64,000 bases of DNA. Origin: Penicillus capitatus (lineage: Eukaryota > Plantae > Chlorophyta). Positions 1 through 64,000 of the stretch are shown here, piece after piece. The notes beneath the pieces are model-generated. The model did no database searches. It worked only from the letters and a program-made list of their open reading frames with translations, and was not told the DNA's origin. The first letter of the stretch is position 1. Each line of letters starts with the position of its first letter. The stretch lies in the NCBI GenBank assembly GCA_965649825.1, contig OZ287696.1:1209981-1273980 (forward strand), in the 5' to 3' direction. Position numbers and translations under genes: made by a program.

Positions 1-466
1 TTCTTCGACCCCGTCACACTCTTCCTGACCGGCTCGCTTGTTCCTTCCCTTCTCTAGCATCCAACTGGCTCGTTCTCTGGAGTTGGCTTGGCGGCGGCGT
101 CTTACTCTTGTCGGAGCGGAGGCTCAGTCGGAGTCGATGCAAGGATCGGCTCAGCTCCTCTCCCTTGGGTCTGCCAACACACATCTGTTCTGCCATGGAC
201 TCCGTGCGATCGAGGGGGACCGGTTGAGCGTCCGCACTCTGTCGCGGATGGTGAGGGTGATTGTCAAGTTCTCTTCGGCGTCGGGAATGCGCACGACGGC
301 CTGGTCGCAGACACGCGTGATCGAAGGACCGGACACTCCTCGAGCGCACTTTCTCTGCGCTGCTGCCAGACATGTTCGGCGCTGCGCCGAGTGCGAGGGA
401 CGCTTTGAAGAAACGCGGACGGAAATCGCGGCGCAGTAACGTCAACGGCGAAAAGGGGGCGTGCAT
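1..466 (-). CDS. PDE12: PDE12-family 2',5'-phosphodiesterase, 5' part (copy 1; continues left of window)
   Basis: Spliced reading MHAPFSPLTLLRRDFRPRFFKASLALGAAPNMSGSSAEK|AVVRIPDAEENLTITLTIRDRVRTLNR|PKGEELSRSLHRLRLSL resembles the PDE12 N-terminus (AVVRC...NMQRDQSEPLGRVLSRI). Near-identical to 52434-52906, where the gene can be followed into the nuclease domain. Confidence 0.75.
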
Positions 467-510
467 GGCACTGCCGATCACATTCCGCAGAAGGACAAGG
501 CGATTGCCTG

Positions 511-1190: not shown

Positions 1191-2071
1191 TCGAGAACGA
1201 GGGTGCGATCGGCGGTATTTGCGAGGCAGTTCGAAGCCGCTCGCCGTTTCCTGTTACATCGTCTCGTCGTCAGTCGACCGCAAGTGCTGATCCGGGTTCT
1301 CGCAAATCGATAGGCCTCCAATGGATTGTTGCTCTAACGTTCGAATTTGTGTTACATCCTCTTCAGTCGTTTTCTGCAACAAAGAAGAGCGTCTCCTGAC
1401 TAAATCGGTTGTCAAGAATCGATTCAGATCGTCCACCAAGCCGACGCTCTGAAAAGAATCTTACTCGTGCATGCATCTCACAGACGAGAAAACAAACGTC
1501 ACCGAACTGAATACGCGTCGCAATGAAACAAAGATTTGCCGGAAGCAAGAAACGACCCATCGGTAAATCCAGACGAGCGATCCTTCATCGACGTTGCAGC
1601 GATGAACAACAGACACAGCTTTCCAAGAGCTTCTCAGGCGAGGGACACTCTTCTGTGTGCGATCGTGCAGGCAAGTGCCACAGCAGTATGCACTGTCGAC
1701 GACGGTTTCTCCAACAGGCTGATGATGCCGGATCGCCTGGAAACCGCCGATCGAGGACGACCAGATAAGCATAAAACGCACGCGATGCTCGATCGATCGC
1801 TGATGGATCGTCCACAGAGTGCGAATCCGTTGCGCTCTCGTGTGCATTGCGAGTGCGGTGTGAAAGAACCTATTGAACTCTCGGCCTGCTGTCGTATTCT
1901 CACTGTTTCGTAACAAGTCTGGAGTGTCTTGGTTTATCCAGATTGTCGGCTTCCTGCTACACAGTCTTCTGTCTCTTTTCAGTCTGTCTGCGGTGTGCGT
2001 GGCGCGTCATTGAAGTAATAGTTAGACGATTGGAACAGCGTCGCAGAGATGATGTCCTTCTCGTTTTCCTG

Positions 2072-2533
2072 ATGTTACGATCAGCTTGCAAAACCGGCGT
2101 TTGTTCTGTCTGCATTGTTTTCCTTGTACCACTCGCATTTTATGCAGTGTCACACTACTATGACTTTATCGACAAGCTTGCTCTTCGTTCGGCCTTCTTT
2201 AGCGGCACGGACGAGGAATTCCTCCTCTTTATGATGGAAGACGAAGAAATCTCGGCTGCGTTTGAAGAGCTACTCCATAGTGGCCTTCGCCTTTTATTAC
2301 TCGCTATTCTCGCCATTGGGAGTCTTATCTGCTATACTGGTTTCGCAGTCTGCCCAAAATGCTGGTGTTGTTGTTGGGTCTCCTGCTGTTTCTTTGTCTT
2401 CGAGTATGTGTTGTTGATGATGTCTCCATCGATTCTGAACTTTCTCGCCGTGTATGTCAAGGATAACTTCGTGCCCCATGGTGATAAAAACACGGATGAT
2501 CGATTTTGCGATGCGGACATCGGAATCTGCTGA
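2072..2533 (+). CDS. Cys-rich multi-pass membrane protein of unknown function (copy 1)
   Basis: Three hydrophobic segments and the motif GSLICYTGFAVCPKCWCCCW. The reading frame is preserved in the diverged paralog at 54520-54987. Confidence 0.55.
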   Translation: MLRSACKTGVCSVCIVFLVPLAFYAVSHYYDFIDKLALRSAFFSGTDEEFLLFMMEDEEISAAFEELLHSGLRLLLLAILAIGSLICYTGFAVCPKCWCCCWVSCCFFVFEYVLLMMSPSILNFLAVYVKDNFVPHGDKNTDDRFCDADIGIC

Positions 2534-4573
2534 CAATGGATGTTTTTTTGTGAGTCGGCGCTTTCCTTTACACAAGTGACGACAGTCCGATTCCACATTC
2601 AGCATCAGGCATAAGATGCAAAAGATTGTCTTTCAGAACGAAGATAAGATCGAAAGAGTCGAGGATCAGGAAAAGTATCAGATAGCCTGTTGGCCAAGAC
2701 GGCATCCCAAGTGTGGAAGAGCATTCCGGACACTTCTGTTGATGCTCGTTTTTAATGGTTTCGTTCTTATATGTGTGCTTGCATGCTTCCAATGACTTCG
2801 ACTGTCGTTTACGATCAAATTCGTTAGAATCCTCTCTCGATGACACATGGCTTCAAGAAACGCGTGAATTGGAGTGCGTGAAAGACTCTATGCCTTCCTC
2901 CACCTCTGACGCTTCCAATTCTTGGATCATACAGGGCATAAGGCATAGATATTTCTGGATCTTCCTTCCCTTAGCTCTAATGAAGCAACATCGCTATTTC
3001 GAGGTTATTATCGTCAGCTGATGCCTCAATCGAGGTTCGGTGACCAAGTTCGACCGTCCACATACAAGTCGTGCAACTTACAGAAGACCTCTTAAAACCA
3101 CGAGGTATCTTTACCTTACCACGTCCAGCAGCAGATCACATAGAATCTTAACGCAAGCTTTCCACTTGCTCGATTGTTCTTTCCGTATTGTTTCTTACTC
3201 TCGAAATTGCTCTCCGATTTTGTTTAAGTATCTCGCAGCTGCACAGGCACTATGCTTCGTTCGCAAATGCGTCACTGAATTCTCCCCTATCTCGACGAGA
3301 ATGTGTCTCATTTTGGCTGTCGAAAGAGAACATACAAATCAACGTTTGACAATGTTCTGTAATGCTGGTATCCAATGGCGTAAGTTGAATGGAAAACTCT
3401 GAAAGACTTTTCGACATTGTTTTCTGCACACAGTTCACAATGTGCGGTAAACGTCGTGCATCCAACTCTTTCCTCCGGCACCAGAATACTTGCGCAAAAC
3501 ATGTGATAAACCTTGTTAAGACGAGAACAGACAGTATCATTTCTACTCTTTAGTGTCGTCTTCAGAAGGCAGGCGATCGTTTTTACTGTTTGTGGTTGTT
3601 CTCATTGTCTTAAAAAGGTAACAACGTTCATTATGATTACCACGAACATGTCATTGGCGATGAACTCGAAAGCCAAGGACGATTATGCAGCGCGTTCTCG
3701 ACAGAAAATAGATCGCCACGTTTGATCGCGAGAAACTCAATAGCACATGGTTATTGATCTTGTTCTCTGATGAATTCGAGAGCTATCGTTGAACGTGGTG
3801 TTGTTCTTTTCTTTCCATCGATTCACAACACGGCGAAAACGTTAAACACCTGCTTAATCGACGATCAAAGACCCGTCTTCTTTAGTTGCCGAATTAACCA
3901 AAGGAGTTCCAAAATTTGTCAACGCCGTTAGTGCGCGTCTTTGCAAGTCGATGCCATTCCAACATCAACGCGTTTTAAGACCGAAGAGGTAGATCGCTGC
4001 GCGTCGAACTGAGATCGAAATCGAATTGAACGATCGATTAATCGCTACGAGCAAAGCTAACTTGCTCGATTTTTCGGTCGTCAGTTTCACTTGGAAATCG
4101 CGACATGATTGGTACGAGATTCTACTTTTTCCGCTTTATGCGAGGTTGACAGATCCAATATCAATCTGCATCAACTCTATAGATCGATTAAAATACAAAT
4201 CGATTTCGATCAGTTTATTTCCGATTGAATCGGACTACCTTGATTGTTCGATCGTCAATTGCGTTACAATCATCCATGATTGGATAAACATGGATAACCT
4301 GCTTTCTTGAACTGGCTGTTCGTAAAGCTTTAATTTAGTCGACGATCGTTTGCGGTTCCTGCAGATCAGCGACACAGGTATCTGTACGTGTGATATGCAA
4401 CGAACTTATCGTTGTGCACAGTTGATCGACGATGAAAACGAGACGCCGGAAGAGTTTGTTAATGATTCCTACTAGGAAGTTGATCTAAGAACGATCCTCG
4501 AGAATCTTTCCAAGAAAACGAATTCCCGATAGGCAATGATTCTGATTCCTGTCTTACACTTTCTCTTGGGTTG

Positions 4574-7921: not shown

Positions 7922-9100
7922 TTAATAAGGCGCTTCCAGTCTGGAAGTGTTTCTGCTGTCATAATTGTCTAATTTGAAGCTGTTCCAATCGGCAGATGTC
8001 AATCCTCGCTGCATCATAGCCAGAACCGTCGCCATCTGAGAATAGGTCACACTATTGATTAACCCTTCCTGCAGCAAGACATATGTAGACTGAAGACGAG
8101 AACTTATTACCGTACAACAGGAGTACCTGCACGCGAAATGGCCTCCCTCCTTCTGACAGTTTCACCAATTGGTGTGTGTCTCTGACGGGGACCTTCGTTA
8201 AATCTTCAATGCCATCTTTTTTGATGATCTCCTGAATCGCCGCGTGGACGTTGTCGATTTTCATGTATCGACTTCTGCCTGTTCCCAGAAGACAATTCCT
8301 TGCCAGCCACTCGAAGTCCATTTCTTTTCCATGGAAGGCAGCACTGGCCAAGTACGATAACACGGTTGCCGTTTTGAGATTGCGCTCTTTTGCGATCGCC
8401 TCGACGTCAAGTCCTTGTGTCCAGTCTTCATGCGCCCGTTCCGCTGTCTTTCTCAGGTAAGAATCTACGACGACCCTCTCTCCAGAAGTTTGGACTCTCT
8501 CTGCAGAAGCAGGAGGTTGATCGAATTGAAAGCTCTCATCAGTCAGGAACGCAAAATCGCGGACAATAACGTTGACCCGTCCCTGGTAACTACTCAGTGT
8601 TCCTTGAATGACGATCTTGACTCCCTTCTGGACATGTTGACGCACTTGCTTCGCCGCAAAATCGAAAAACACAGTCTCGAAGTAACCGTAGCTTGTCTCT
8701 TTCTTGGATGATTCGCGCGGAACAGCAAGAGTCATATGGGCAAAAGGACTTCCGTCTCGTGAACTTCTTTCCTCGGGGGTATCCATCGCAAACCCGCTGA
8801 GTGTTACGGTATTGGTCATCTGGGACTCAAAGTTCTCGAATCGCGGAGGAGGAACGAGTTCGCTCTTGATCTCTGTTTCGACGGCAGGCTTAACATTCTG
8901 CTTTGCACCGATCGTGGATCGGCGACTAGGCCATGTACGCTGAACGGCATCACTGATAAAGAAGAAGGCTGAAGAGACGGAGGGTGCTGCACCTGAGAAC
9001 TGCTGCTGGCGGACACCGATAGCCTCGATGGTCCGCGTAGGTGGGTCCGCGTCGCTCGGATCGCGGCATTTCTCGGAACGTGACGCAGCAACATGTGCAT
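7922..9100 (-). CDS. Organelle-targeted single-stranded DNA-binding protein (SSB/OSB-like OB fold) fused to a C-terminal HTH_40 (YpbB/RecQ-C-terminal type) domain
   Basis: Arg/Ser-rich transit-like exon 1. SSB motifs NTVTLSGF...AHMTLAV...GVKIVIQGTLS. HTH part GLDVEAIAKERNLKTATVLSYLA, with a last exon containing VTYSQMATVLA. Confidence 0.8.
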
Positions 9101-19931: not shown

Positions 19932-21551
19932 TTATGTGACTCGACGGATGACGCCTAGGTCTCTGATCTCGTCCGATGGACCTTCTCGAATAAACTTCTG
20001 CCAGTGCTTTGGCATAAGTGCTGCCAGATGTACTGCTTCGACACGTCGCTCCAGCGCCACCTCCAAAGCGACGACCTGATGCACATGTCCATGATCGCCA
20101 GAGGGGAACAGTTCGATGTCATGGTACTTCAAACAATGTGGTTTCGATTTCCGCTTTCGATTTTTGGAGTTTCGGCAGCAGGGCATGCATAACGGCCTCT
20201 GCATCATCTTTGGCCAGCCATGCGTGCTCGAGCAACTCCGGAAACTTGCCTGCAAGCACACAGAAATTGCAGCAGTTCTTCATAGCTTCCTCACACCTTC
20301 CACAGCTCTAAGAATATAACAGAGTCTCTCTGCTAAGATAGATTTCAGTTCTTTCATCTGATCGACAATCTCGTCCAGTTTCGCATCATTGCCCAATGAC
20401 CGACAGGCACGACCATACAACCCTGTATCGATGCGTCAAAACAGACATGGAGGATGGCACACAGCCGAGAACACCTGACAGAAGATAATTGATTTGCTCC
20501 GTACCGACATTTGCTGCCAAGTTATCCAACAACCACTCATAAATTCGATCTGCCTCATCCGGCTGATTCCAGAATATGTGCTGCAGCAGCAACGTATCGT
20601 ATTCCGTCACTTCTGATCGACCGTTACAGTAAGCAGAGACCTAGTGGAGACAGTCACGCATCCAAAGCCGCCATTCCATCATGCAAGGCATACACGCATG
20701 AGATCCACCGCTTTGACTAGGCGTCGGTCCGAAACGTAGACAGGAGGCTCGCACTTGTTCTGTAGCCAGCTTCGGAGATCTGCCATGAGATGGACGACCT
20801 GAGGAGGAATCGACACTTCTTTGCGTGCCTTGTGTCGTGTCTCTTCAAAATCTGTCAACAGCAGTCCAGATTGCTGCTCCTCTGTTCCTTTCTCTGCCTC
20901 TTCGTTTCCTTCTCGTGGCGTTCCCGCTGAAGACAGCAATGCCACCAGTCCTCCTGATGTGACTTGCTTCACTTCCTTGCGAATCAAGAATCGATCGTAA
21001 AGGGCATTCAGTTCTTCACTCTCGGGCAACTCGTTCGAAGCCCCCACCAAACACAGCAACGGAATCCGTGTCCTTTCCGATCCATTGTCGAACAATCGCT
21101 CATTAAGTACGGTGAGCAACGTGTTGAGAATGGCGGAGTTGGCTTTGAAGATTTCGTCGATGAAGGCGACGGTTGCATCCGGAAGATACCCCTCCGTTTG
21201 GCGGATGTATCGATCGTCCTCCAGTGCGCGCATGGACAGGGGGCCAAAGAGCTCCTCAGGTACGGAGAATTTTGTCAGCAGCCTCTCAAAGAACGATCCC
21301 GCACAGAGCTTAGACAGACGTCGTCCCAGTTCACTCTTGGCCGTTCCAGGCGGTCCGATAAAAAGAACGTGCTCACCACTCAATGCCGCCAGCAGTAAGA
21401 GACGCACTTCTGTCTCCCGTTCCACGAGATTTCGCTCCATCGACGTGATCGAGGATTGGATGCGTGAACGCAGGGATACTGTCGCCAGATGCTGCCCATC
21501 CTGCCGTCCATTCATTGCGCTCTCTTGCACTTCATCGTAGATCTTCTTCAT
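19932..21551 (-). CDS. MoxR/RavA-type AAA+ ATPase (5' exons extend toward ~21813, not resolved)
   Basis: GEHVLFIGPPGTAKSEL, FERLLTKFSVPEELFGP, FIDEIFKANSAILNTLLTVLNER, ASNELPE, ALYDRF and VSDRR. Confidence 0.92.
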
Positions 21552-43329: not shown

Positions 43330-44223
43330 GCAGACACAGGAATAGCTGGACCCGGTGGCGCCACTCTGTTGCACCTCAAACGCCGTGGCCGTCCGTTCGC
43401 GCGAAGTCGAGTACGGTGAACGAGAAGTCATCGGATGTTTAAGCTCGTCGCTGTATACAATCTCCGGGTCATCAGCGTTGTTTGAGCGAGATGTGTTTTG
43501 CGATCGCAAACGCAAGGCCGTTCGATCGAACGTCTTTCGACACACGCCGATCTCCTCGTTCGTTCGTGTCCCTCGGTGGATACGAACGAATTCACCGACA
43601 ACGTCTGAGGACGAACCCGGATCAGGTGCATCAGTATTGAAAATCAAGCTTTGGCAGTTTTGTTAGACAGATATCTTTCGCCGATGCATTGATCTAATCG
43701 TCAGTATCTTTGATTGGACGGGCACGTGTCTTTCCGCTCCGATGATAAAGACCGTCATCCTCTAACATACAAGGTTTAGCAGGAATGTTCTAACCACCAG
43801 CAATCGAATGTCCTAGACAGTATATCCTACCGCCAAAGAGTACTGCGAGATGATACGGGCAAGCACGGATCTCTCTTTTTCGTCCTTGAGCTGTGTGTGT
43901 TCAGGAGTATCCATCTGTGACGAAGGCCTCTCTCCCACACTGGGTTGGTGCCGAACCTGCATACTCGTTCATGAATTTTCTGTAGTCTTGGATGTTCTTT
44001 CTTCAGTGTTAAATGACACTCGGCAAGAGATGCCATTGGGGTGGCAGTAGTATACAATCGAGCTTCTTTGTGGTAGGTACTCTGAGTCCTGCATGTTTAA
44101 ACCGAGTCGATCGGACACACCTCTAGCAACCTGGACTGGGATGCATAAGGGACGTCTTATACTGAATTTTCGACGCGTTCGTTATCGCGAGCCACATCGT
44201 CTACTGTGTCTGTGCAGTCGTAA

Positions 44224-44338
44224 CAAATGAGATGGCCTAAACAGCTTAACAGGTGTCTGTACAATTGCCACAAGTGAGATGGCCTAAACAGCTTAACAGG
44301 TGTCTGTACATTTGCCTCAAATGAGATGGCCTAAACAG
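44224..44338 (+). repeat. 47-bp tandem repeat (~2.4 copies), element copy A
   Basis: gatggcctaaacag recurs at 44231, 44278 and 44325 (period 47). The same unit occurs at 63.3 kb. Confidence 0.95.
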
Positions 44339-44559: not shown

Positions 44560-46140
44560 TGTCTGCTGCTGTCAAATCAGGGATTGTATGCTGCTGCTGT
44601 CAAATCAGGGATTGTATGCTGCTGGAGGCTGATAATAGGCTGTCTGCTGCTTGCTTCATCATAGGCTGCCGGATGTCAAATCATAAGTTGCCTGATGCTG
44701 GAGGCTTGCTTCATTGTCGGTTGTCGTCTTCATCGAACACCGTCGGATTTCAGATCACGTAGGATGTCTGCTGCTGGAGGCCTGACCGTAGGCTTTTCGT
44801 CTTCATCATGGACAGTCGGATGTCGGATCGAATTTGTTGTCCGCTGCTGGAGGCTGCTGCTGCTGGCTTTATCATAAGGTATTGGACGCTTAATCGGAGA
44901 TCCTGATCTTCATCATAGCTCTCGGATCTTAGATCGGATGGGCAGTTGTCTTCATAGCAGGCTCTCGAATCTCCGATCACATGGGCAGTTGTCTTCATCG
45001 CATGCAGTTGTCTTCATCATAGCTCTCGGATGTCCGATCGGATGGGCAGTTGTCTTCATCATACGCTGTCGATTATCCGATCAAAGGCTGCTGGAGGCTT
45101 GATCGTCGTTTCTCGTCGTCATCGTAGGCTTTTAGATGTCGGGTCATAGACTGCCGGAGGCTTGATCACACACCATCGGATTCCAGATCTAGGCTGTCGC
45201 CTTCATCACACGCCGTCGAATGTCAGATCAGAGGCTGCTGTTGAGGCTTCATCATCGGTTGTTCATCATCATCGTCTGTCGGATTCCAGATCATATCGGT
45301 TGTCTGCTGCTGGCGGTCAGATCATAAGGCTGTCGGAGGCTTCATCGTAGGTTCTCGCCTTCATTGTTCGCCGTGGGATGTCAGATCGTAGATTATCTGC
45401 TGCCGTCGGATCATAGGTTGTCTGCTGATTGCTTCATCGTAGCTCCCGGATGTCAAATCAAATTCCGTCTGCCGCTTGATGTCAGATGATAGGCTGCTGG
45501 AGGCTTGCTTCATCACACGCCGTCGAATGTCAAATCATATTCTGTCTGCTTCTGAAGGATTGCTTCATCATAGGCTGTCAGATATCGGATCATGTAAGTT
45601 GTCTGCTGCCGGAGGCTGTCAGATTATAGGCCGTCGGAGGCTTCATCATAGGTCTGTCGGACTCCAGATCATAAATTATCTTCTGCTTGAGGCTTGATCG
45701 CAGGTCGTCGTCTTCATCATAGATTGTTGCAGGCTTCATCATGGGTTGTCGTTCTCATCAATGGGCTGTAGGATTCCATATCATAGCATGTCTGCTGCTG
45801 GAGGAGGCTTGATCGCAGGTTTTCGTCTTCATCGTAGGCTGTCGGGTTTCAGATCATAAATTATATGCTACTGGAGGCTTCATCGTGGGTTGTTCGTCAT
45901 CATCATCTGTCGGATTCCAGATCATGTAGGTTGTCTGCTGGAGGCTTCCTTGTAGGCTGTCGGATTCCAGATCAGAGGCTGTCGTCTTCATCGTACGCCG
46001 TCTACTGTCGAATTTTGGATCATTGGATGTTTGCTGCCAGAGACTTCATCGTGGGTTATCATCGTCATCATGGGCTGTTAGATTCCAGATCATAAGCTGT
46101 CTGCCTGGAGGCTTCATCGTACGTTTTCGGACGTCGGCTT
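44560..46140 (+). repeat. Degenerate satellite (core gctgctggaggcttcatcat / gtcggattccagatcat), element copy A
   Basis: Many degenerate copies of the core, no long ORF, and an exact 28-bp duplication starting at ~44571 and ~44599. Confidence 0.9.
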
Positions 46141-49463: not shown

Positions 49464-52400
49464 TCACCCAGAAGCTTCTCGCACGCCAAAACGTTCTAGA
49501 GCTTCCAGAACGGACTGGAGACCGTCCCCTGCGCGCAGAATTTTGTACTGGCCCGATGATGACAGATCCACCACGGTCGATCCCAGTTTCGATCCTGAGC
49601 TTCGGCCACCGTCGAAGACGACGGCACAGTCCGGCCAGAGCTCCTGAAACTCAGAAACGCACACGCTTGACGGATCTCCGCTCCTGTTGGCGCTCGTCAG
49701 CGCGATCGGTTTGCGCAGCCGACTGCACAGAAGGCGAGCGAACTCGGCATCCGGTACCCGCACGCCTAGAGATGCAGCCGAAACGCGAGATGGCACCGTG
49801 GGTTCCATCAGAACCTACCGATCGAAGGGAGACCTGGATTGAGCTCCGGTGCGAGGGGAGACGTCTCCTTCCGTCGGAGGACCGCCGTTACGGGTCCAGG
49901 AAGCAGGGCATCCAGCAACCCGTCGGGCAGGTGATGCACCTCGCACAGTCTGGCGACATCCCGAAACTCGGCTACGCACACGGCCAGCGGCACATCCGTC
50001 AAACGACCCTTCGTCGCATACAGGGCGTTGACGGCGTTTCCGTTCGCTGCGTCCGCCGCCAATCCGTAGATCGTGTCCGTGGGCAGGCCTAGGCGTCGCA
50101 GAGGATGAGAGCGGAGAACGAGAAGCGAGATCCGGACCGACGAGTCTGCCTCTCTCGAGTTCCTCGACGCCTCTGTCCACGTGTTCAACGACGGCTGGAA
50201 GGATTCGTCCCTCGGTGTTGTCTCGGCCACCCGGAGAGCCCTTCCTCTCGTCTTTGAAACGCATATCCACGACGACCTGCGGTGCCGACAGTGGTTTCTT
50301 AGCTACGACACTCGGTACAGAGATGGCCACTCACCGCCAGATGATCGGACGGGTACACCTCGGAGGGACACGGCTTCCCTATCCTCTCGGGAGAGGGTAT
50401 GGGAATGTCCCGTTCGACGTCCACGAAGCGCGGCTCGTACCAAACGTAGTCCAGCAGTCCTTTGAAGCCTTCAGTGAAGTTCGAGTAGGGCGTTTCGAGA
50501 CCTGACACACAGCCGAACGTCTGTTAGACGTGATCGAACGAACAGCTTTCGATCGTTCGTTCCCTACTCATTGCGCTTCGAAGCTCGAACGGCGCCTCGA
50601 CGTCGATGCCTTCGACTGGATCCCCTTCGCCCTCGTCTGCGCTCTCGTACAGCCGCGACACGTCGTCTTCTGGTGTCATCTGGGCGGAGAAACAGACGGA
50701 GTCGGTGTCGAGCCGAGCAGAGGCGATCACCTTGGTCCAGCGGAACTTCCGGCACTCGCTCCACTCCCAGTGGTCCTTCCTAAGGCGGCCGTCGCGCAGC
50801 AGCGTCAGTGCGGCTGCGTCCACAAAGAGCGTTGCGGCTTCTGCTTCGCCGAGAGCCAGACAGCATACCGTCGACTTTCCCGGTGGCCAGATCGACGCTG
50901 CTGTTCAGATCGCCGACCAGCACCAGCTGCGCACTCTCTTCGACGGATCGCGCCCAGACGCTCGCCCGGTGGAGCATGTCGAGGACGTGGAAGACGCGTA
51001 TGTGCTCTCCGTGCGAATGAGAAATGAGGTGCGTGTTCACCACGCAGAGCGGCTTCTCGCCTTCTCCGACCGGCTTCAGGAGGACCGCCTGGCCAATCGT
51101 CACCACGTTCTTGAGCGCCGTGCTCATGTTCTTGCACCCGGCGATCATCTCGCGAAAGGGCATGAGGTGTGCGGGAAGCTCGCCGTTCAGGACTTCGTTC
51201 ATGTTCAGGCGGACATGCGCAGCAATCTGAGTGCACGCGATGCAAGGTTCGCGGCGGCGCAATCGCGGACGGACGCACCTCGAATCGCGATCGGCGGGCG
51301 AAGAGGGCCTCTCACTCTCTCGTGGTGCCGCTCTTCTGCGCAAAGACGCCGGCGAATCCTACAGACACGACAGATGGAGGAGAGGGACCCTTCCGTTGAC
51401 GTGACCTTCGGCCTGGAGATGGGGACGGTAGTAGGTGTCGAAGGCTTTCAGGTCACACTCCTGCAAGCAGACAATGTCTGCGTGGTAGCCGAGCAGTTCC
51501 TTGAGCACAAGCTGCTTCCGCACGTCGATGTCGAGATCGTTGACAGAACTCAGCGTCAGTCTCAAAAGACAGGGGGCGAGTGCGCGCCTGGGGCTGCAGT
51601 ATCCGAAAACGCTCTTCGCGTTCGGCCTCGAAACGTAGGAGTCGGCGAGGACGTTGTAGGTGACCACGCGGAAGGACGGGGACTCTAGTGTTCGAGGCGT
51701 CAGCTCGTGTCGGCCGTCTCCGGACGCCTTCTCCCTTCCGGGAGCCACGGGACCTGTTGGCGAACGGCACGTGCGTCGGCACCCAGCGGAGACGACACGA
51801 ACCCTGTTCGGCGAAACGCGACTCGCCGTGGACAGACGCTCCTTCTGCTCCGTCTTCGACGTCTCGAGCGACCGGCGTGCACTCGACTCCCAGTAAACGA
51901 CCCACGTCTGGCGGTGCCGGAGTGTAGACCCTCTCTGTGGCGGCTTTCAACTTCGTCCACGACGTGCCTGTCAACAGAACGCGATCTCCTCCCGACTGCG
52001 CGGCTGGAGTGGGCAACTTTTAGATGTCCTGGCGAACCACTGCCACAGACAGGCGGATTCGTCGGCGAATTCGAGCTGCACAAGACCCAGGTCGGCAGCA
52101 GTCCGGAAACGAACGCGGGCGCACTTCACAGAGCGGGAAGACAGGGTGTCCGGCGATCGGCCTTTCGTTTAGACACATCTGGAATGGAGAAATGGAAGAC
52201 GAAACGCGGACAGGCCTGGCTCACGTTCATGACGGTGGGCGGATTCGTCACGACCTCGTAGCGCTTGTCGCCTGCGATCAGCCACCTCGCTCTTCTCCAT
52301 GCACGCTCGTTCGTCACTGCTTCGTCGACCAGACTGCAAGAATCGCCGACCTCTGCGAGACGGATGTATCGGACGGGGCAGCAACGCACGTCGCTTCGGA

Positions 52401-52906
52401 GTCGGACGCATAGAGAGCCACGGTGACCGGTTGTTCTTCGACGCCGTCACACTCTTCCTGACCGGCTCGCCGGTTCCTTCCCTTCTCTAGCATCCAACTG
52501 GCTCGTTCGCTGGAGTTGGCTTGGCGGCGGCGGCGGCGTCTTACTCTTGTCGGAGCGGAGGCTCAGTCGGAGTCGATGCAAGGATCGGCTCAGCTCCTCT
52601 CCCTTGGGTCTGCCAACACACATCTCTTCTGCCATGGACTCCGTGCGATCGAGGGGGACCGGTTGAGCGTTCGCACTCTGTCGCGGATGGTGAGGGTGAT
52701 TGTCAAGTTCTCTTCGCCGTCGGGAATGCGCACGACGGCCTGGTCGCAGACACGCGTGAGCGAAGGACGGGACACTCCTCGAACTCACTTTCTCTGCGCT
52801 GCTGTTAGACATGTTCGGCGCTGCGCCGAGTGCGAGGGACGCTTTGAAGAAACGCAGACGGAAATCGCGGCGCAGTAACGTCAACGGCGAAAAGGGGGGC
52901 GTACAT
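49464..52906 (-). CDS. PDE12: PDE12-family phosphodiesterase fused to YrdC/TsaC threonylcarbamoyl-AMP synthase (copy 2; contains an in-frame TGA at 51312-51314, possibly a pseudogene)
   Basis: EEP nuclease motifs TYNVLAD, CLQECD, NTHL, GDLNS, LDYVWY and PSDHLA|VVVDMRFK continue without a stop into LVG|LPTDTIYGL, LLPGPVT, IG|VRVPD, ALTSAN and STVVD. Confidence 0.85.
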
Positions 52907-52950
52907 GGCGCTGCCGATCACATTCCGCAGAAGGACAAGGCGATTGCCTG

Positions 52951-53630
52951 TCAGGTACGACGTCCCATCGTCTGGGGCACAGGATCGGCTGGTCGCAGAT
53001 CCGCGAGGGTCAGCGCCGACACGCGCTCATCGCCCGAACGAACAGCGCCTGGACCGTCTGGACGCCTTCCCCCATGCACGCCGTCGTCTCTCTTCCTCCT
53101 CAGCTTCCTGTCCCAAACCTGTCCGATGGAGATGGCATCCTGGATGTGGCGAATCGACGTTGTGCTGGGGTCCATTCCGAGGTCCAGCATCCTCGATAGG
53201 ATCTCCACTGCCTTCTCTGGCAATGCTTTGACGTGACAGCTCTTCAGGAGCAGCTCGAACGTCTCGCTCTTCGGTCTGATTTCCGACGATACGCCGAGTT
53301 CGATTCTCCGCATCGCGGAATCGAAAACCTCCAAGGCCGTCGAAAACTGAAAGCCAGTCGTCTGCGTTGTCCGGAGGGTCGTCTGCCGCTCACTTGGTCT
53401 GCCTCGATCAACGACTCGATGGCGGCTTCGAGGAGATCGACTGGCATCCGACAACCGCTCAGCCTCGCCCCCTGCGGCAATTCTCGAAGTTCAGTCTGTC
53501 GACTGGACTCGGCAGCCGGGTCGACACTATAATCCCTCGCGGGGGAGCCCATCGGCCATCCGCTTTCAGAAGCGAGACGATCGTCCATCAGTTGCTGTTC
53601 GAAACGCGGACCAAGTCGAGGAATAAACAA
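52951..53630 (-). CDS. Small PPR protein, copy 2; 5' end uncertain
   Basis: Paralog of 511-1190 with both PPR-like motifs intact (SETFELLLKSCHVKALPEKAVEILSRMLDLGMDP). Confidence 0.65.
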
Positions 53631-54519
53631 TCGAGAACGAGGGTGCGATCGGCGTTATTTGCGAGGCAGTTCGAAGCCGCTCGCCGTTTCCTGTTACGTC
53701 GTCTCGTCGTCAGTCGACCGCAAGCGCTGAACCGGGTTCTCACAAATCGATAGGCCTCCAATGGATTGTTGCTCTCACGTTCGAATTTGTGTTACATCCT
53801 CTTCAGTCGTTTTCTGCAGCAAAGAAGAGCGTCTCCTGACTAAATCGGTTGTCAAGAATCGATTCAGATCGTCGCACCAAGCCGACGCTCTGAAAAGAAT
53901 CTTCCTCGTGCATGCATCTCACACACGAGAAAACAAACATCACCGAAATGAATACGTGTCGCGATGAAACAAAGATATGGCGAAAACAAGAAACGACCCA
54001 TCCGTCAATCCAGTCGAGCGATCCTTCATCGACGATGCAGCGATGAACAACAGATGCAACTTTCCAAGGGCTTCTCAGGTGATGATGGACACTCTTCGGT
54101 GTGAGATCGTGCAGGCAAGCGCCACAGCAGTATACACTGTCGACGACGGTTTCTCCAACAGGCTGACGATGCCAGATCGCGTGGAAACCGCCGATCGAGG
54201 ACCACCAGATAAGCATAAAACGCACGCGATCCTCGATCGATCGATCGCTGATGGATCGTCCACAGAGTGCGAATCCGTTGCAATCTCGTGTGCATTGCGA
54301 GTGCGGTGTGAAAGGACCTGTTGAACTCTCGGCCTGCTGTAGCATTCTCACTGTTTCGTAACAAGTCTGGTGTGTCTTGGCTTATCCAGATCGTCGTCTT
54401 CCTGCTACACAGTCTTCTGTCTCTTTTCAGTCTGTCTACGGTGTACGTGGCGCGTCATTGAAGTAGTAGTTAGGAGATTAGAACACCGTCGCAGAAACGA
54501 TGTCCTTTTCGATTTCCTG

Positions 54520-54987
54520 ATGTTACGTTCGGTTTGCAAAATCGGTGTTTGTTTTGTCTGCCTTGCTGTCCTTATACCATTCGCTTCCTATGTCGTGTTA
54601 CACTACTTTGACTTTCGCGACAAGGTTCGTGTTCGCTCGGCCTCCTTCACTAGCGGCACGGACGAGGAATTCCTCCTTTTCATGATTGAAGACGAAGAAA
54701 TCTCAGCTGCGTTGGGGAACCTACTCCAAAGTTGCCTTCGTTTATTAGGACTCTCGATTCTCACGGTCGGGAGTCTTATCTGTTACACTGGTTTTGCAGT
54801 CTGTCCAATGTGCTGGTGTTGCTGTTGGTTCGGCTGCTGCTTCCTTGTCCTCTTGTGTCTACTGCTGCTAATGTGGCCGGCGATTCTTATGGTCTTCCTC
54901 GCCATGCATGTCGAGAACGAATTCACGTCCGTCCATAACGAAGACACGGATGATCGATCGTGCGATGCAGACATCGGAATCTGTTGA
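54520..54987 (+). CDS. Cys-rich multi-pass membrane protein (copy 2)
   Basis: Paralog of 2072-2533 with conserved SGTDEEFLLF, GSLICYTGFAVCP.CWCCCW and CDADIGIC. Confidence 0.55.
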   Translation: MLRSVCKIGVCFVCLAVLIPFASYVVLHYFDFRDKVRVRSASFTSGTDEEFLLFMIEDEEISAALGNLLQSCLRLLGLSILTVGSLICYTGFAVCPMCWCCCWFGCCFLVLLCLLLLMWPAILMVFLAMHVENEFTSVHNEDTDDRSCDADIGIC

Positions 54988-56646
54988 CAGTAACAGTTTT
55001 TTCTCTCGGCCAGCGCTTTCCTTTGCGCAAGTGACGACAGTCCGATTTTACATTCAGCATCAAGCATAAGATGCGAAAGATGTCTCCCACGATGAAAGCC
55101 AAAAGAAGTCGAGGATCAAACAAGTCTCAACTATCCTGTTGTCGAAGATAGCATCCGCAGTGTGGAAGAGCATTACGGATACTTCTGTGTGATTCGTCTT
55201 GGACTGGTCACTCATCTCTTCGTTTCCTGGTTGTGCTTTCCTCCCTGTGTCCTTGAAGGAGAAAAGAAGAGACCTTGCGAACAAGACATGTGCATCCGTC
55301 TATGACGTAGAGGATGTTTTGAATCACACATTACACTTAGAGGCGTTCTGTCCCGTCGGAACGAGAAAAAATGGACTTGCGGTTGTAATGAACTTTTTTG
55401 CGATATGTGAGCAGACCTTGAGAAGACGTATCTTGCGTCAACGATTCAACTCATCAAAGACTATGCACTCACTCTCGAAATATGTGCATCGTTGTCATCG
55501 ACAAAGAATCGATTTCGTAATGAACCTGACGGGCGACTTTGAGAAATCCGTCGGCTTTTTGAGAAAAAGATTCTTGAACCATTGAACAGTGTTCAGCACG
55601 AAATTGGAGAATTGACATATGTAGATTTTCGCTGTGAGCTATCGCGTTCTCGACCACGAGTGAGGATCGATCCAAACGGATGGTGCAGCTGGATCGTTCA
55701 TTTCATCCGCCGACTCGTGCTCCGATTTGGTCGGTTTTCTCAAGGTAAGACAAAACCTGACAGTACCCTTTGATGAGCATCTTTGATCGTTTACGCTTTT
55801 CTCAGTGTGCTAAGCATGCTTTCGATGACTTCGACTGTTGTTTACGATCAAGTTCGTCAGAATCGTCTTCCGACGAGCAGATGGCTCCAAGAAATGCGGG
55901 AAGTAGAATTGTACGAACAAACATACCGTTCTCCTCCACCTCTGACGCTTCCAATTCTTGACTTGTACAAGGCATAAGGCATAGAGATTTCTAGATCCTT
56001 CCTTTCGTTTAGAACTAACGAAACAGCATCAATAGTTCGAGGATATCGTCGGTAGACGCCTCGTGCACGGCTCAGTAAAAAAAAGTCGATCATCCACATG
56101 CAAGTTGTGCGCCTTACAGGCAGACTCGCCTGAGGAGCGTTACAGAAAAGTCGCAATAGATTTCACAACGGATGTAGTGATGCAACCGTTCACGGTGATG
56201 GCCGAATCGAAGTTGATCTCTTTTTGCATCGCGTTCCAATTCAAAGCATCTGAATCTCGATCAAACAGTCGTCTGCAGAGAGAAAGGTTCGTTACATGAT
56301 TGGACGTCTTCTTTCTGCCTTTAAGAGTGACTGTTAGACGTAAATCGTCGTAAGATTGTAGAGCAGATTAGTATGTGACTCAACGACTAGCTTCCTTCAA
56401 GGAGAAAGCGATACCTGTCCTTTGCCAACGAGATTTTTCGCCATGCCTGGATGCCGAAATCAAAAGTCGGTGCTTCTTAATGCATTCATTAACGGATCTT
56501 TGGAATGGGAAATTGGCAGAGGCAGACCACATGAAGCCTTAATCTTCCTTATGTATGCCTTGAAGCTTCGGTTGATCAGACACTTATCTCAGCGAAAGAG
56601 AGTTAGCCACCACCGAACTCGCAGCCGTCCCTTGAGTTCGTCTGAG

Positions 56647-62252: not shown

Positions 62253-63276
62253 TCGATTGGATCGGTGTTCGAGCAAAGACAATGCATCTCTAGCGTTTTC
62301 TGTTCGTATTCTTTTGGCCACTGAGCGATGGACCACTCAGAGAAATCGTGCGAAGTCCTCGTTCTATCAATCTGCGAAAAAGAAAGAGGATTCAAAGATG
62401 ATGTGTTCGATGGAAATGTGTAGAATGGTCTGCTTTCACGGAACAGCTTTTAGAGTGTCAGAGGTTATGTGCTGAATGCGTCACCATTCGTTTCAAGTGT
62501 CGTGATTGCTCGGCAATGAAAAGGACTTGTTCCGTCCGTGTCCTTTTCTACTTACCATCTGCAACTCAGAACACAGTTGCGCTTTTCATAAAGGGCAGCT
62601 CGATGTTGCTGCTCTGACTTTTCAAAAGTTGATGAGTATTTGCCGCATCCTCTTAGAATCATTTGAGCGTCGGAGTGTGCTCTACTTTCAAAAAGTTTCA
62701 TCGATCGAGACACAAAGCGCGGTGTCGACTCGAAGCCTCCTCTTTCACAACGTCGATCGGTCATCGAAACAGATAGACACCTCTGATCGCATCGCATCGC
62801 TTGTTGTTTTGCGATCTTGTATCGACATTCGCTCGAGGATTGGGCGCTTTCGATCGCATTGTAATTCTGAAGAAAATGCTCCGTCCGGCACAGAAGGTCG
62901 CCAATCGAAGTCATCTCCCGACGTCAAGATGAAATGCGCGCATCACAATGCAACAGTTGTGGCGTCCTTCTCTTCACACGATGTCTGTGGTGTCATAGCG
63001 AGGACGACAGAAAGCCGTCAACATCATCCCACTGTGCACGGGATGCTTCATCTTGGCCAACAGGCGCTGCATGGATGTATCATGCATGGTCATGTGTGTT
63101 GAGTGAGATACAGGATCTCAGACACGTCGATCACGATGGGGGTGCTATCATCGTACGAGATGCCGTTATTGCGTGCCACGTCGATGATTGCTCTGCGAAC
63201 GCCCTTCGTCCGAACGCGAATCGACGCGGTTTCGCGTCGAGGAATCGCAGGGTACATCGTCTACTGAGACTGTAGA

Positions 63277-63442
63277 ATTGCCACAAATGAGGTGGCCTAA
63301 AAAGCTTAACAGGTGTCTGTACGGTTGACAAAAAGGAGTTGACCCAAACAGTTTAACAGGTGTCTGTACAGTTGACAAAAAGGAGTTGACCCAAACAGTT
63401 TAACAGGTGTCTGTACAATTGCCATGAAAAAATGGCCTAAAC
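63277..63442 (+). repeat. 47-bp tandem repeat (~3.5 copies), element copy B
   Basis: taacaggtgtctgtac at 63307, 63354 and 63401 (period 47). Confidence 0.95.
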
Positions 63443-63509: not shown

Positions 63510-64000
63510 AATAGGCTGTCTGCTGCGTGATGTCAGATTATAGGCTGCTGGAGGCTTCAGTATTGGCTGCCCGCTGCTGGAGGCTTGGTTTTATGCTGCC
63601 CGCTGCTGGAGGCTTCATTATATGCTGCCCGGCTGCTGGAGGCTTGATTTCATGCTGTCTGCTGGAGGCTTCATTATATGCTGCCCGCTGCTGGAGGCTT
63701 GATTTCATGCTGTCTGCTGGAGGCTTCATTATATGCTGCCCGCTGCTGGAGGCTTCATTATATGCTGCCCGCTGCTGGAGGCTTCATTATATGCTGCCCG
63801 CTGCTGGAGGCTTCATTATATGCTGCCCGCTGCTGGAGGCTTGATTTCATGCTGTCTGCTGGAGGCTTGATTATATGATGTCTGCTGCTAGAGAATTGAT
63901 TATATGCTGCCCGCTGCTGGAGGCTTAGACAAAAGGCTTCTGGAGCCTTCATCAAAGGCTGTCGTCTCAATCGTAGGCTGTCGGATGTAGAATCTCAGGC
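63510..64000 (+). repeat. 29-bp minisatellite (gctgctggaggcttcattatatgctgccc) with shorter variant units, element copy B; runs off the window
   Basis: Near-perfect 29-nt period at ~63740-63840, with the same core as the 44.6-46.1 kb satellite. Confidence 0.95.

What the first reader, a model, noticed from the sequence alone, without database searches (positions are those of the whole stretch)
49464..52906. PDE12 phosphodiesterase fused in frame to YrdC/TsaC t6A-synthase
Seen: the EEP nuclease's last motif PSDHLA is followed by a canonical 58-nt intron (gtgagt...accgcag, 50334-50277). The next exon supplies VVVDMRFK, which completes the PSDHxAxVxDLxxK motif. It then reads without a stop through a short linker (DERKGSPGGRDNTEG) into RILPAVVEHVDRGVEELERGRLVG|LPTDTIYGL, a complete YrdC domain. 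Known: PDE12 trims spurious poly(A) from mitochondrial tRNA/rRNA 3' ends and cleaves 2-5A; YrdC/Sua5 makes TC-AMP for t6A37. Both act on organellar tRNA maturation, and I know them only as separate genes. Inference: a bifunctional tRNA 3'-end repair/anticodon-modification enzyme. I do not recall this architecture being described, but cannot exclude it without a search.
Basis: partly seen in the sequence, partly recalled or inferred. Interest (0 to 1): 0.8.

Follow-up and report, generated by a model that had tools for sequence, protein, structure and literature searches.

The report
Green-algal PDE12–YrdC fusion gene, damaged copy
The gene really does join a PDE12-type RNA-trimming nuclease to a YrdC tRNA-modification enzyme in one reading frame. 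However, this fusion is already present (uncharacterised) in the databases for many green algae, and the copy flagged here carries a premature stop and a frameshift while an intact twin sits 52 kb away.

Summary
After PSDHLA comes a 58-nt GT-AG intron (50334-50277). The next exon gives VVVDMRFK, which aligns to the very last residues of human PDE12. It then runs through a 15-aa linker into a complete YrdC/TsaC domain. I built an 18-exon model on the minus strand with 17 introns of 39-66 nt. It encodes PDE12-like_N, an EEP nuclease domain and YrdC.

The fusion is not new to the databases. More than 45 fused proteins exist across Chlorophyta: Trebouxiophyceae, Ulva, Tetradesmus and Chloropicon. 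Some are single intronless 871-aa ORFs. Chlamydomonadales and animals have unfused PDE12. I found no paper that describes the fusion.

It has an in-frame TGA (51314-51312) at an invariant Gly codon. It also has a +1 C (52899-52894) that breaks a conserved 31-aa presequence. Four sibling sequences are intact: paralog B (its start is at window 466-1), two copies on another contig, and a related species. Those copies are under strong purifying selection (dN/dS 0.135).

Verdict: a real, conserved but uncharacterised fusion family. This locus is probably a decaying duplicate.

The parts
49464..52906 (-).
   Evidence: Model built. It is colinear with an intact ortholog in the relative L001 and with more than 45 fused proteins.
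52789..52906 (-). Exon 1. The upstream ATG is at 52906-52904. In intact copies it opens a 31-aa presequence that ends at a second, conserved ATG (52812-52810).
   Evidence: Copies B, X, Y and the relative read M(Y/H)A(P/S)FSPL(T/P)LLRRD(F/I)R(P/L)RFFKAS(L/F)ALGA(A/T)P(N/T)MS(G/N)S(S/N)AEK in frame.
52894..52899 (-). Lesion 1: a run of six C where all four sibling sequences have five. This +1 frameshift disconnects the presequence.
   Evidence: (site 1).
52660..52739 (-). Exon 2 (AVVRIPDGEENLTITLTIRDRVRTLNR), the start of the mature PDE12-like N-terminal region
52545..52609 (-). Exon 3
52390..52486 (-). Exon 4
52225..52333 (-). Exon 5
52125..52178 (-). Exon 6 (start of the Pfam PDE12-like_N match)
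52018..52075 (-). Exon 7
51803..51967 (-). Exon 8
51588..51753 (-). Exon 9. The EEP domain begins here (SFRVVTYNVLAD).
51549..51587 (-). Intron 9: 39 nt, GC-AG, with a conserved CTGAC branch-like site. It is the only non-GT donor in the gene.
   Evidence: The relative has a 2-nt indel here while both flanks stay in frame. Human PDE12 and the algal homologs lack these residues.
51406..51548 (-). Exon 10 (contains the LQE catalytic Glu motif, VCLQECD)
51279..51358 (-). Exon 11 (FAGVFAQKSGTTRE*EALFARRSRFE)
51312..51314 (-). Lesion 2: an in-frame TGA replaces GGA (Gly). This Gly is invariant in 17 fused homologs and is also Gly in human PDE12.
   Evidence: site 2; G329 invariant.
50869..51226 (-). 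Exon 12 (NTH and GDLN catalytic motifs)
50731..50813 (-). Exon 13
50568..50679 (-). Exon 14
50335..50501 (-). Exon 15, which ends ...YPSDHLA (the SDH catalytic motif)
50277..50334 (-).
   Evidence: It is 56 nt with indels in the relative, while the flanking exons have no indels.
50253..50276 (-). VVVDMRFK, the last beta-strand of the EEP domain. It aligns to the C-terminus of human PDE12.
50208..50252 (-). Linker DERKGSPGGRDNTEG. It evolves fast and has no stop codon in any copy.
50138..50207 (-). First helix of the YrdC domain (RILPAVVEHVDRGVEELERGRLVG), encoded in the same exon as the EEP end and the linker
49819..50088 (-). Exon 17: YrdC core (PTDTIYGL, KGR of the KxR motif, LPGPVT)
49464..49765 (-). 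Exon 18: YrdC C-terminal half (TSAN, the SxN motif; GSTVVD) and the TGA stop at 49466-49464
1..466 (-). 5' end of intact paralog B. Exons lie at 466-350, 300-221 and 170-106, and part of exon 4 at 53-1. The rest lies beyond the window's left edge.
   Evidence: The full copy was read in L008.
52434..55193 (.). The in-window part of a segmental duplication. It pairs with window 1-2743 (90.7% identity). On the A side the duplicated unit extends down to about 47359.

Best explanation
**What the locus is.** It is one of two paralogs, 52.4 kb apart, of a gene found across the Chlorophyta. The gene encodes a single polypeptide with, in order:
- a short organelle-type presequence;
- a PDE12-like N-terminal Ig-like domain;
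- a PDE12-type EEP 3'-exoribonuclease/phosphodiesterase domain;
- a flexible low-complexity linker;
- a YrdC/TsaC-type threonylcarbamoyl-AMP synthase domain.

**How the family most likely works (inferred).**
- Both modules are catalytically active.
- They are loosely tethered rather than sharing one integrated active site.
- The fusion mainly guarantees co-targeting and 1:1 co-expression of a tRNA/rRNA 3'-oligo(A) trimming activity and the TC-AMP supply for t6A37 in the same compartment.
- A conserved second Met just before the mature N-terminus may additionally give a cytosolic isoform.

It carries a nonsense codon at an invariant Gly and a frameshift in the presequence. It is most likely a recently disabled, redundant duplicate. 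The intact copy B starts at window 466 on the minus strand.

**Shown:** gene structure, domain identity, conservation, selection, distribution and the two lesions. **Inferred:** enzymatic activities, localisation and the reason for the fusion.
For: **Gene model**
- 18 exons; 17 introns of 39-66 nt; 16 are GT-AG and one is GC-AG.
- Against a related species (L001, 78% DNA identity), exons are 82.7% identical with one in-frame indel. Introns are 70% identical with 16 indels. The ortholog is fully open.

**Domains**
- Pfam: PDE12-like_N 6.9e-10, Exo_endo_phos 6.5e-12, Sua5_yciO_yrdC 3e-44.
- PDB: the best hit is human PDE12 at 2e-50, and the alignment ends at its C-terminus. The C-terminal part hits YrdC/Sua5 at 1e-17 to 5e-23.
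- The AlphaFold model of homolog P0023 matches PDE12 (TM 0.87) and TsaC2/Sua5/YrdC. No PDB chain covers both parts.

**One polypeptide**
- Intronless 871-aa ORFs carrying both domains sit on gene-dense genomic contigs.
- More than 45 fused proteins cover 98-100% of the query.
- About 35 clusters at 50% identity span the junction.
- The Met in VVVDMRFK is Leu in the relative, so there is no conserved internal start.

**Both modules under selection**
- Invariant in 17 homologs: E of LQE, N/H of NTH, D/N of GDLN, D/H of SDH, K and R of KxR, TSAN, PTDTxYG, PGPxT and GST.
- The KxR-SxN tetrad is essential for TC-AMP synthesis (PMC10484737).
- dN/dS between copy B and the relative is 0.08 (N-terminal), 0.14 (EEP) and 0.16 (YrdC).

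**Loose tether**
- The linker is 16-71 aa, low in complexity and poorly conserved.
- Its pLDDT is below 50.
- Chlamydomonadales PDE12-like proteins end right after the EEP domain.

**Copy A is damaged**
- A has TGA where B, X, Y and the relative have GGA. A has six C where they have five.
- Private changes: A 12 synonymous/10 nonsynonymous plus the frameshift. Its positional counterpart Y has 5/10, including P>S in the invariant PGP motif. The B-position copies have 9/4 and 5/2.
Against: - No transcript or protein data exist for this organism.
- The two lesions rest on a single metagenome assembly at about 21x coverage (L009 is the same sequence as the window). A homopolymer indel is a classic consensus error.
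- The excess of nonsynonymous changes at the A-position locus is only suggestive (20 nonsynonymous/17 synonymous against 6/14).
- Nothing here measures enzymatic activity, localisation or substrate.
- The model's pTM of 0.78 could mean the domains pack together, which would favour tighter coupling than I propose.
- I could not test whether chlorophytes have another TsaC.
Confidence: 0.8

Rival explanations
1. Copy A is functional. The TGA and the extra C are consensus errors of a low-coverage metagenome assembly, so the window encodes two working fusion genes.
For: - The contig carrying A has only about 21x coverage, and the only other sequence for it is the same assembly.
- One lesion is a homopolymer length change.
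- All 17 introns keep usable splice sites, and no other frameshift occurs in 2.5 kb of coding sequence.
- A-B dN/dS is 0.30, still below 1.
Against: - Two independent disabling changes fall in one 3.4-kb gene, while the adjacent 14 kb is identical between contigs.
- The G>T substitution is not a typical homopolymer error.
- A has the most private nonsynonymous changes. Its allelic counterpart Y also shows relaxed constraint, including a hit in an invariant motif.
Confidence: 0.2
2. The locus makes two separate proteins. PDE12 would end by retention of the junction intron (stop after PSDHLAVSGHLCTECRS). YrdC would come from an internal promoter or start (the Met in VVVDMRFK).
For: - An unspliced junction intron gives a stop 11 codons after PSDHLA.
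- An ATG lies in VVVDMRFK in copies A, B, X and Y.
- Chlamydomonadales show that the two functions can be separate.
Against: - Without the splice, the EEP domain loses its last conserved strand, which aligns to the PDE12 C-terminus.
- That Met is Leu in the relative.
- The end of the EEP domain, the linker and the first YrdC helix share one exon.
- Intron-free homologs encode both domains in one 871-aa ORF.
- The linker never contains a stop in any of more than 45 homologs.
Confidence: 0.05
3. The two modules are mechanistically coupled rather than merely co-targeted. For example, the EEP domain could check or repair the tRNA 3' end and hold the tRNA while TC-AMP is made for the partner TsaD/Qri7. 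Alternatively, the EEP domain could have been repurposed to hydrolyse stray adenylates such as TC-AMP, much as nocturnin turned out to be an NADP(H) phosphatase.
For: - The fusion has persisted since before the split of Chloropicophyceae from core chlorophytes.
- TC-AMP delivery is an acknowledged open problem, and proximity of TsaC to its partners has been proposed (PMC10484737).
- The pTM is 0.78 for the whole 871-aa model.
- EEP relatives have diverse substrates (PMC9181182).
Against: - The linker is variable and disordered.
- The fusion was lost in Chlamydomonadales.
- The two reactions have no shared intermediate.
- The EEP catalytic residues and the PDE12-specific N-terminal domain are conserved as in animal PDE12.
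Confidence: 0.2

Closest known systems
Human/animal PDE12 (2',5'-phosphodiesterase 12; PDB 4Z0V, 4ZKF, 4Z2B)
   Same: - Same two-domain layout: an Ig-like PDE12_N domain followed by the EEP domain.
- Same catalytic motifs.
- Best sequence hit (E=2e-50) and best fold hit (TM 0.87).
- The EEP domain ends at the same residue.
- PDE12 is a mitochondrial-matrix deadenylase that removes spurious 3' adenylation from mt-tRNAs and 16S rRNA (PMC9181182).
   Different: - Animal PDE12 stops after ...DLKWK. Here the frame continues through a linker into YrdC.
- Identity is only about 28-30%.
- The substrate and compartment in algae are unknown.
YrdC/TsaC (Tcs1) threonylcarbamoyl-AMP synthases (E. coli YrdC 1HRU; human YRDC; Arabidopsis AT5G60590)
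   Same: - Full-length YrdC domain with the KxR-SxN tetrad, PTDTxYG, PGPxT and GST motifs.
- No SUA5 C-terminal domain, so it is the Tcs1 type that plants and green algae are reported to use exclusively (PMC4615747).
- The closest unfused relatives are streptophyte YrdC proteins (Chara, 47% identity).
   Different: It sits at the C-terminus of an ~850-aa protein, behind a nuclease, instead of standing alone.
Database-annotated chlorophyte PDE12-YrdC fusion proteins (e.g. Micractinium conductrix '2,5-phosphodiesterase 12' / UniRef 'Threonylcarbamoyl-AMP synthase'; Auxenochlorella protothecoides; Chloropicon primus 'RibB-like alpha/beta DHBP synthase'; Ulva mutabilis UM024_0071)
   Same: Same domain order, colinear over 98-100% of the length at 35-40% identity, with the same invariant residues.
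   Different: - The window's organism is an unidentified metagenomic green alga with uniformly tiny introns.
- It has two copies of the gene.
- The flagged copy is interrupted by a stop codon and a frameshift.
Other TsaC/YrdC-domain fusions: Sua5 (TsaC+SUA5), TobZ/HypF (YrdC-like+Kae1-like), Pandoravirus TsaN (TsaD-TsaC-SUA5-TcdA), Mycoplasma TsaC/HemK
   Same: The YrdC domain is covalently linked to another enzyme (PMC4615747, PMC10484737).
   Different: In most of those fusions (Sua5, TobZ/HypF, TsaN) the partner acts in the same adenylate-transfer pathway and can channel the intermediate. Here the partner is an RNA 3'-exonuclease with no shared intermediate. Neither review mentions this architecture.

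Membership tests
PDE12 (2',5'-phosphodiesterase 12) family | PDE12-specific N-terminal Ig-like beta-sandwich domain (Pfam PF21171) upstream of the EEP domain | tested here: met
   PF21171 scores 39.3 bits (cut-off 27), E=6.9e-10, on residues 120-195 of the model. The PDB alignment to 4Z0V starts in this domain.
PDE12 (2',5'-phosphodiesterase 12) family | EEP catalytic domain with the CCR4-type metal-binding and catalytic residues (N of YN, E of LQE, NTH, GDxN, SDH) | tested here: met
   All are present in copy A (VVTYNVLAD, VCLQECD, VVNTHL, VGDLNS, PSDHLA). Across 17 fused homologs the LQE, NTH, GDxN and SDH residues are invariant, and the Asn of YN is conserved in at least 90%.
PDE12 (2',5'-phosphodiesterase 12) family | Closer to PDE12 than to other EEP deadenylase-like proteins (CNOT6L, nocturnin, ANGEL2, TDP2) | tested here: met
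   PDE12 scores 2e-50, CNOT6L 1.5e-14 and nocturnin 1.5e-13. Foldseek gives 5e-38 and TM 0.87 for PDE12 against 3e-22 for CNOT6L.
PDE12 (2',5'-phosphodiesterase 12) family | 3'-5' exoribonuclease activity on poly(A) and cleavage of 2'-5' oligoadenylate | not testable with these tools
   This needs a recombinant enzyme assay.
PDE12 (2',5'-phosphodiesterase 12) family | Organellar (mitochondrial matrix) localisation | not testable with these tools
   Intact copies have a conserved, basic 31-aa N-terminal extension. This is only suggestive. In copy A the extension is frameshifted.
TsaC/YrdC (Tcs1) threonylcarbamoyl-AMP synthase | Complete YrdC domain (Pfam PF01300) | tested here: met
   151 bits, E=3e-44, profile positions 2-178 of 178.
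TsaC/YrdC (Tcs1) threonylcarbamoyl-AMP synthase | KxR-SxN catalytic tetrad | tested here: met
   KGR (in ATKGRLTD) and SAN (in LTSANRSG) are present in copy A. K700, R702, S789 and N791 are invariant in the family alignment. The motif is defined in PMC10484737.
TsaC/YrdC (Tcs1) threonylcarbamoyl-AMP synthase | Tcs1 type: no C-terminal SUA5 domain (PF03481) | tested here: met
   There is no PF03481 hit, and the protein ends about 20 residues after the YrdC domain.
TsaC/YrdC (Tcs1) threonylcarbamoyl-AMP synthase | Makes TC-AMP from threonine, bicarbonate and ATP; complements tsaC/sua5 loss | not testable with these tools
   This needs biochemistry or complementation.
Chlorophyte PDE12-YrdC fusion family (database-annotated, uncharacterised) | Single gene with the order PDE12_N - EEP - linker - YrdC, colinear with family members | tested here: met
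   Coverage is 98-100% against more than 45 fused proteins. The profile search gives the same result. The junction lies within one exon.
Chlorophyte PDE12-YrdC fusion family (database-annotated, uncharacterised) | Uninterrupted reading frame from the start codon to the YrdC stop | tested here: not met
   Copy A has a TGA at 51314-51312 and a +1 frameshift after the ATG at 52906. The feature is met in copy B, in copies X and Y, and in the related species.

The most novel reading that the evidence does not exclude
In most green algae the only TsaC-type TC-AMP synthase is physically tied to a PDE12-type 3' exoribonuclease. It would be delivered to an organelle, and by a conserved second start codon to the cytosol as well. 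t6A37 synthesis would then be coupled to a check or repair of the tRNA 3' end, a link between two tRNA-maturation steps that has not been described. The fission in Chlamydomonadales and the decaying duplicate here would be natural experiments on that link.
Probability: 0.15. Interest if true: 0.6.

Novelty: new member of a known kind. Interest (0 to 1): 0.35.

Why it matters
A fusion of this kind (a Rosetta-stone fusion) is free evidence that two proteins work in the same place on related substrates. This one links the deadenylase that cleans organellar tRNA and rRNA 3' ends (PDE12) with the first enzyme of the universal t6A37 pathway (YrdC/TsaC). The fusion has been conserved since early in chlorophyte evolution. 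How unstable TC-AMP reaches its partner enzymes, and how plants and algae serve three compartments with a single Tcs1 gene, are open questions. A naturally tethered, and in one order naturally split, version offers a handle on both. For genome annotation the result is practical:
- These proteins are currently named after only one of their halves, and the name differs between databases.
- The flagged locus should be annotated as a probable pseudogene, with the intact paralog nearby.

Tried and rejected
I used an alignment of returned homologs instead.
2. I looked for an independent sequence of copy A.
   - The 114-aa YrdC ORF is not on record.
   - The contig found through the antisense ORF is 100% identical to the window, so it gives no confirmation.
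   - A cluster look-up did yield two further copies on another contig.
3. I checked the 3.1-3.3-kb Logan contigs L003 and L004 for poly(A) tails, to show they are mRNAs. None were present, so this is inconclusive.
4. TGA as a sense codon, selenocysteine or recoding is rejected.
   - The gene's own stop is TGA.
   - All siblings have GGA at that site, an invariant Gly.
5. Rescue by the cryptic donor that the G>T change creates (GA|GTGAGA) is rejected. Splicing from it to the next acceptor shifts the frame and hits a stop after 7 codons (reading).
6. I first read 13 extra residues in exon 9 as coding. I now interpret them as a 39-nt GC-AG intron. The relative has a 2-nt indel there, and all homologs lack the segment.
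7. I suspected an apicomplexan or chromerid origin from the sequence 'feel'. This is rejected. The best named hits for the PIG-A ORF are Trebouxia, land plants and a Scenedesmaceae transcriptome.
8. Literature searches for PDE12 with YrdC, for TsaC fusions and for PDE12 in Chlamydomonas found no description of the fusion.
Full report
**1. The observation**

The gene lies on the minus strand. The exon ending ...CPSEVYPSDHLA (to 50335) is followed by a 58-nt GT-AG intron (50334-50277). The next exon (50276-50138) reads VVVDMRFK-DERKGSPGGRDNTEG-RILPAVVEHVDRGVEELERGRLVG. A 49-nt intron (50137-50089) then leads into LPTDTIYGL... and a stop at 49466-49464.

- Pfam finds a complete Sua5_yciO_yrdC domain (E=3e-44, profile 2-178 of 178) and an Exo_endo_phos domain.
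- Against the PDB, the best hit is human PDE12 (4Z0V, E=2e-50).
- PSDHLAVVVDMRFK aligns with PSDHIALVCDLKWK, the last residues of the PDE12 chain.

The frame then continues where animal PDE12 stops.

**2. Full anatomy**

I assembled an 18-exon model (52906/52812 to 49464). It has 17 introns of 39-66 nt. Sixteen are GT-AG and one is GC-AG (51587-51549). The product has three domains: PDE12-like_N (PF21171), an EEP domain and YrdC.

A related species was recovered from a metagenome contig (L001, 78% DNA identity). It has the same 17 introns and a fully open frame.
- Exons are 82.7% identical, with one in-frame indel.
- Introns are 70% identical, with 16 indels.
- At the junction the relative reads VVVDLRFK-DEKTDASCDRDDNEG-QILPAV...
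- The linker is the same length there and has no stop. The Met of VVVDMRFK is not conserved, so there is no conserved internal start for a separate YrdC.

**3.

- Exon 11 reads FAGVFAQKSGTTRE*EALFARRSRFE, with a TGA at 51314-51312.
- The relative and every homolog have Gly at that position. It is GGA in the relative and an invariant column, G329, in a 17-sequence family alignment. Human PDE12 has HEG there.
- The ATG at 52906 is followed by GCCCCCC, whereas the sibling sequences have one C fewer.
- In the siblings that ATG opens a conserved, basic 31-aa extension, M(Y/H)A(P/S)FSPL(T/P)LLRRD(F/I)R(P/L)RFFKAS(L/F)ALGA(A/T)P(N/T), in frame with a second Met (MS(G/N)S(S/N)AEK) and the mature protein.
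- In this copy the extra C throws that extension out of frame.
- The G>T change also creates a GTGAGA donor-like site. Using it would shift the frame, so it offers no rescue.

**4. A second, intact copy and two more on another contig**

- Window 1-2743 is a 90.7%-identical direct repeat of 52434-55193.
- I fetched the contig that runs off the left edge of the window (L008, 100% identical to window 14364-1). It shows that the repeat extends over at least 7.8 kb and contains a complete paralog, copy B.
- Copy B is 854 aa, fully open, and has the presequence and GGA. Its first exons are at window 466-350, 300-221, 170-106 and 53-1.
- A cluster look-up found two further copies, X and Y, 52,454 bp apart on an 844-kb contig of the same assembly. 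Both are intact.
- Flank matching shows that Y is the positional counterpart of A and X is the counterpart of B.

Private codon changes:

| Copy | Synonymous | Nonsynonymous | Notes |
|---|---|---|---|
| A | 12 | 10 | plus the frameshift |
| Y | 5 | 10 | includes P>S in the invariant LPGPVT motif |
| B | 9 | 4 | |
| X | 5 | 2 | |

The caveat is that the lesions rest on one ~21x assembly. The only other sequence of this allele is the same assembly.

**5. Is the fusion real as a protein?**

Yes, for the family.
- A search with the assembled protein returned more than 45 proteins carrying both PF03372 and PF01300. They are 830-1015 aa long and cover 98-100% of the query.
- Some are single, intron-free 871-aa ORFs on gene-dense ~60% GC genomic contigs, so no splicing model is needed.
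- A profile search of a 1.8-billion-protein library gave about 35 clusters at 50% identity whose match spans the junction.

Named organisms with the fusion:
- Trebouxiophyceae: Micractinium (two species), Auxenochlorella, Apatococcus, Myrmecia, Elliptochloris, Trebouxia, and a partial sequence from Helicosporidium.
- Ulva mutabilis.
- Tetradesmus obliquus.
- The prasinophyte Chloropicon primus.

Chlamydomonadales have PDE12_N+EEP proteins that end immediately after the EEP domain (...PSDHLAVVYDMEWR). These are Volvox, Gonium, Edaphochlamys, Chlamydomonas sp. UWO241, C. eustigma and Sanguina. Animals also have the unfused form. The fusion is therefore old in Chlorophyta and was undone at least once.

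**6. Are both halves likely active?**

In the 17-sequence alignment these residues are invariant:
- EEP domain: E of LQE, N and H of NTH, D and N of GDLN, D and H of SDH.
- YrdC domain: K and R of KxR, TSAN (SxN), PTDTxYG, PGPxT and GST.

The KxR-SxN tetrad is essential for TC-AMP synthesis (PMC10484737). dN/dS between copy B and the relative is 0.08 (N-terminal domain), 0.14 (EEP) and 0.16 (YrdC). The linker evolves fast.

An AlphaFold2 model of homolog P0023 has mean pLDDT 82.8 and pTM 0.78. The linker (631-647) and one EEP loop have pLDDT below 50. Foldseek matches PDE12 (TM 0.87) for the N-terminal two-thirds and TsaC2/Sua5/YrdC for the C-terminal third. No PDB chain covers both.

**7. Mechanism (inferred)**

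PDE12 in human mitochondria removes spurious 3' adenylation from mt-tRNAs and 16S rRNA (PMC9181182). YrdC/TsaC makes TC-AMP for t6A37. Plants and green algae are reported to have only the Tcs1 (YrdC) type (PMC4615747).

Four observations fit two autonomous modules that are tethered for co-targeting and co-expression, rather than an integrated active site:
- The linker varies from 16 to 71 aa, is low in complexity and is predicted disordered.
- The two reactions share no intermediate.
- The fusion was lost in Chlamydomonadales.
- There is a single shared presequence.

A Met lies 0-25 residues before the mature N-terminus in most full-length homologs with presequences. This suggests alternative initiation and dual localisation, but that is speculation. 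Tighter coupling remains possible and is listed as a rival. Examples would be tRNA 3'-end checking linked to t6A, or hydrolysis of stray adenylates.

**8. Organism**

It is an unidentified eukaryote from a metagenome assembly (ENA ERZ25074695). A PIG-A ORF in the window has its best named hits in Trebouxia, land plants and a Scenedesmaceae transcriptome. The fusion itself is chlorophyte-specific. The source is therefore a green alga, but the lineage is undetermined.

**9. Novelty**

The architecture is already in public databases under automatic names that describe only one half. The name differs between NCBI ('2',5'-phosphodiesterase 12') and UniRef ('Threonylcarbamoyl-AMP synthase'). I found no paper that mentions it, including two papers that discuss TsaC fusions. 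This locus is a new, and probably defective, member of a known but uncharacterised family.

Noticed in passing
window 1-2743 and 52434-55193 (the A side extends to about 47359; the B side runs beyond the window's left edge, in L008 11622-19436): A segmental duplication of at least 7.8 kb. It carries the whole fusion gene plus its divergently transcribed neighbour, with the copies 52.4 kb apart. The same two-copy arrangement, 52,454 bp apart, is on an 844-kb contig of the same assembly.
   Followed up: yes
window 54370-54987 (+) and 1943-2533 (+): A duplicated ORF for a Cys-rich, multi-pass membrane-like protein (about 200 aa). It is divergently oriented upstream of each fusion-gene copy and has no Pfam match.
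   Followed up: partly
window 7985-49309: In the related species (L001) the fusion gene is followed within about 200 bp by an ML-domain gene and TRM13. In the window the same ML/TRM13 genes (about 7985-4505) are separated from copy A by about 41 kb of other genes. This is an insertion or rearrangement relative to the relative.
   Followed up: partly
window 49464-52906, all introns: The introns are uniformly tiny (39-66 nt; 17 in a 3.4-kb gene), including one GC-AG intron of 39 nt (51587-51549). The gene is 58-62% GC, against about 50% for most of the window.
   Followed up: partly
copy B at window 466-350; homologs P0010, P0012, P0014, P0028, P0029, P0033, P0041: Most full-length homologs that have a presequence carry a second Met 0-25 residues before the conserved AVVR(S/I) start of the mature protein. 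This may mean alternative initiation and dual targeting.
   Followed up: partly
window 20679-21551 (-): A 290-aa ORF gives a strong match to the bacterial-type bpMoxR AAA+ ATPase domain (PF20030, E=3e-63), inside what is otherwise a eukaryotic algal region.
   Followed up: no
window 8052-8819 (-): An ORF combines a bacterial-type SSB domain with an HTH_40 domain. It is possibly an organelle-targeted single-strand-binding protein.
   Followed up: no
window 63544-63926; 44223-44338 and 63270-63421; 44560-46130: - A 29/55-nt tandem array (13.5 copies of the 29-nt unit).
- A 47-nt repeat unit occurs at two sites 19 kb apart (about 79% identity).
- A degenerate ~40-60-nt repeat field.
   Followed up: no
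homologs P0242, P0247, P0248, P0251, P0252, P0254-P0256 (not in the window): Chlamydomonadales PDE12-like proteins end right after the EEP domain, so the fusion was split or lost in that order. I did not locate their YrdC gene.
   Followed up: partly
window 50606-51688 (+): A 360-aa ATG ORF lies antisense to the EEP exons. Metagenome gene callers report it as a protein, and it forms a 4-member cluster. It is almost certainly an artefact of GC-rich coding sequence on the other strand.
   Followed up: partly
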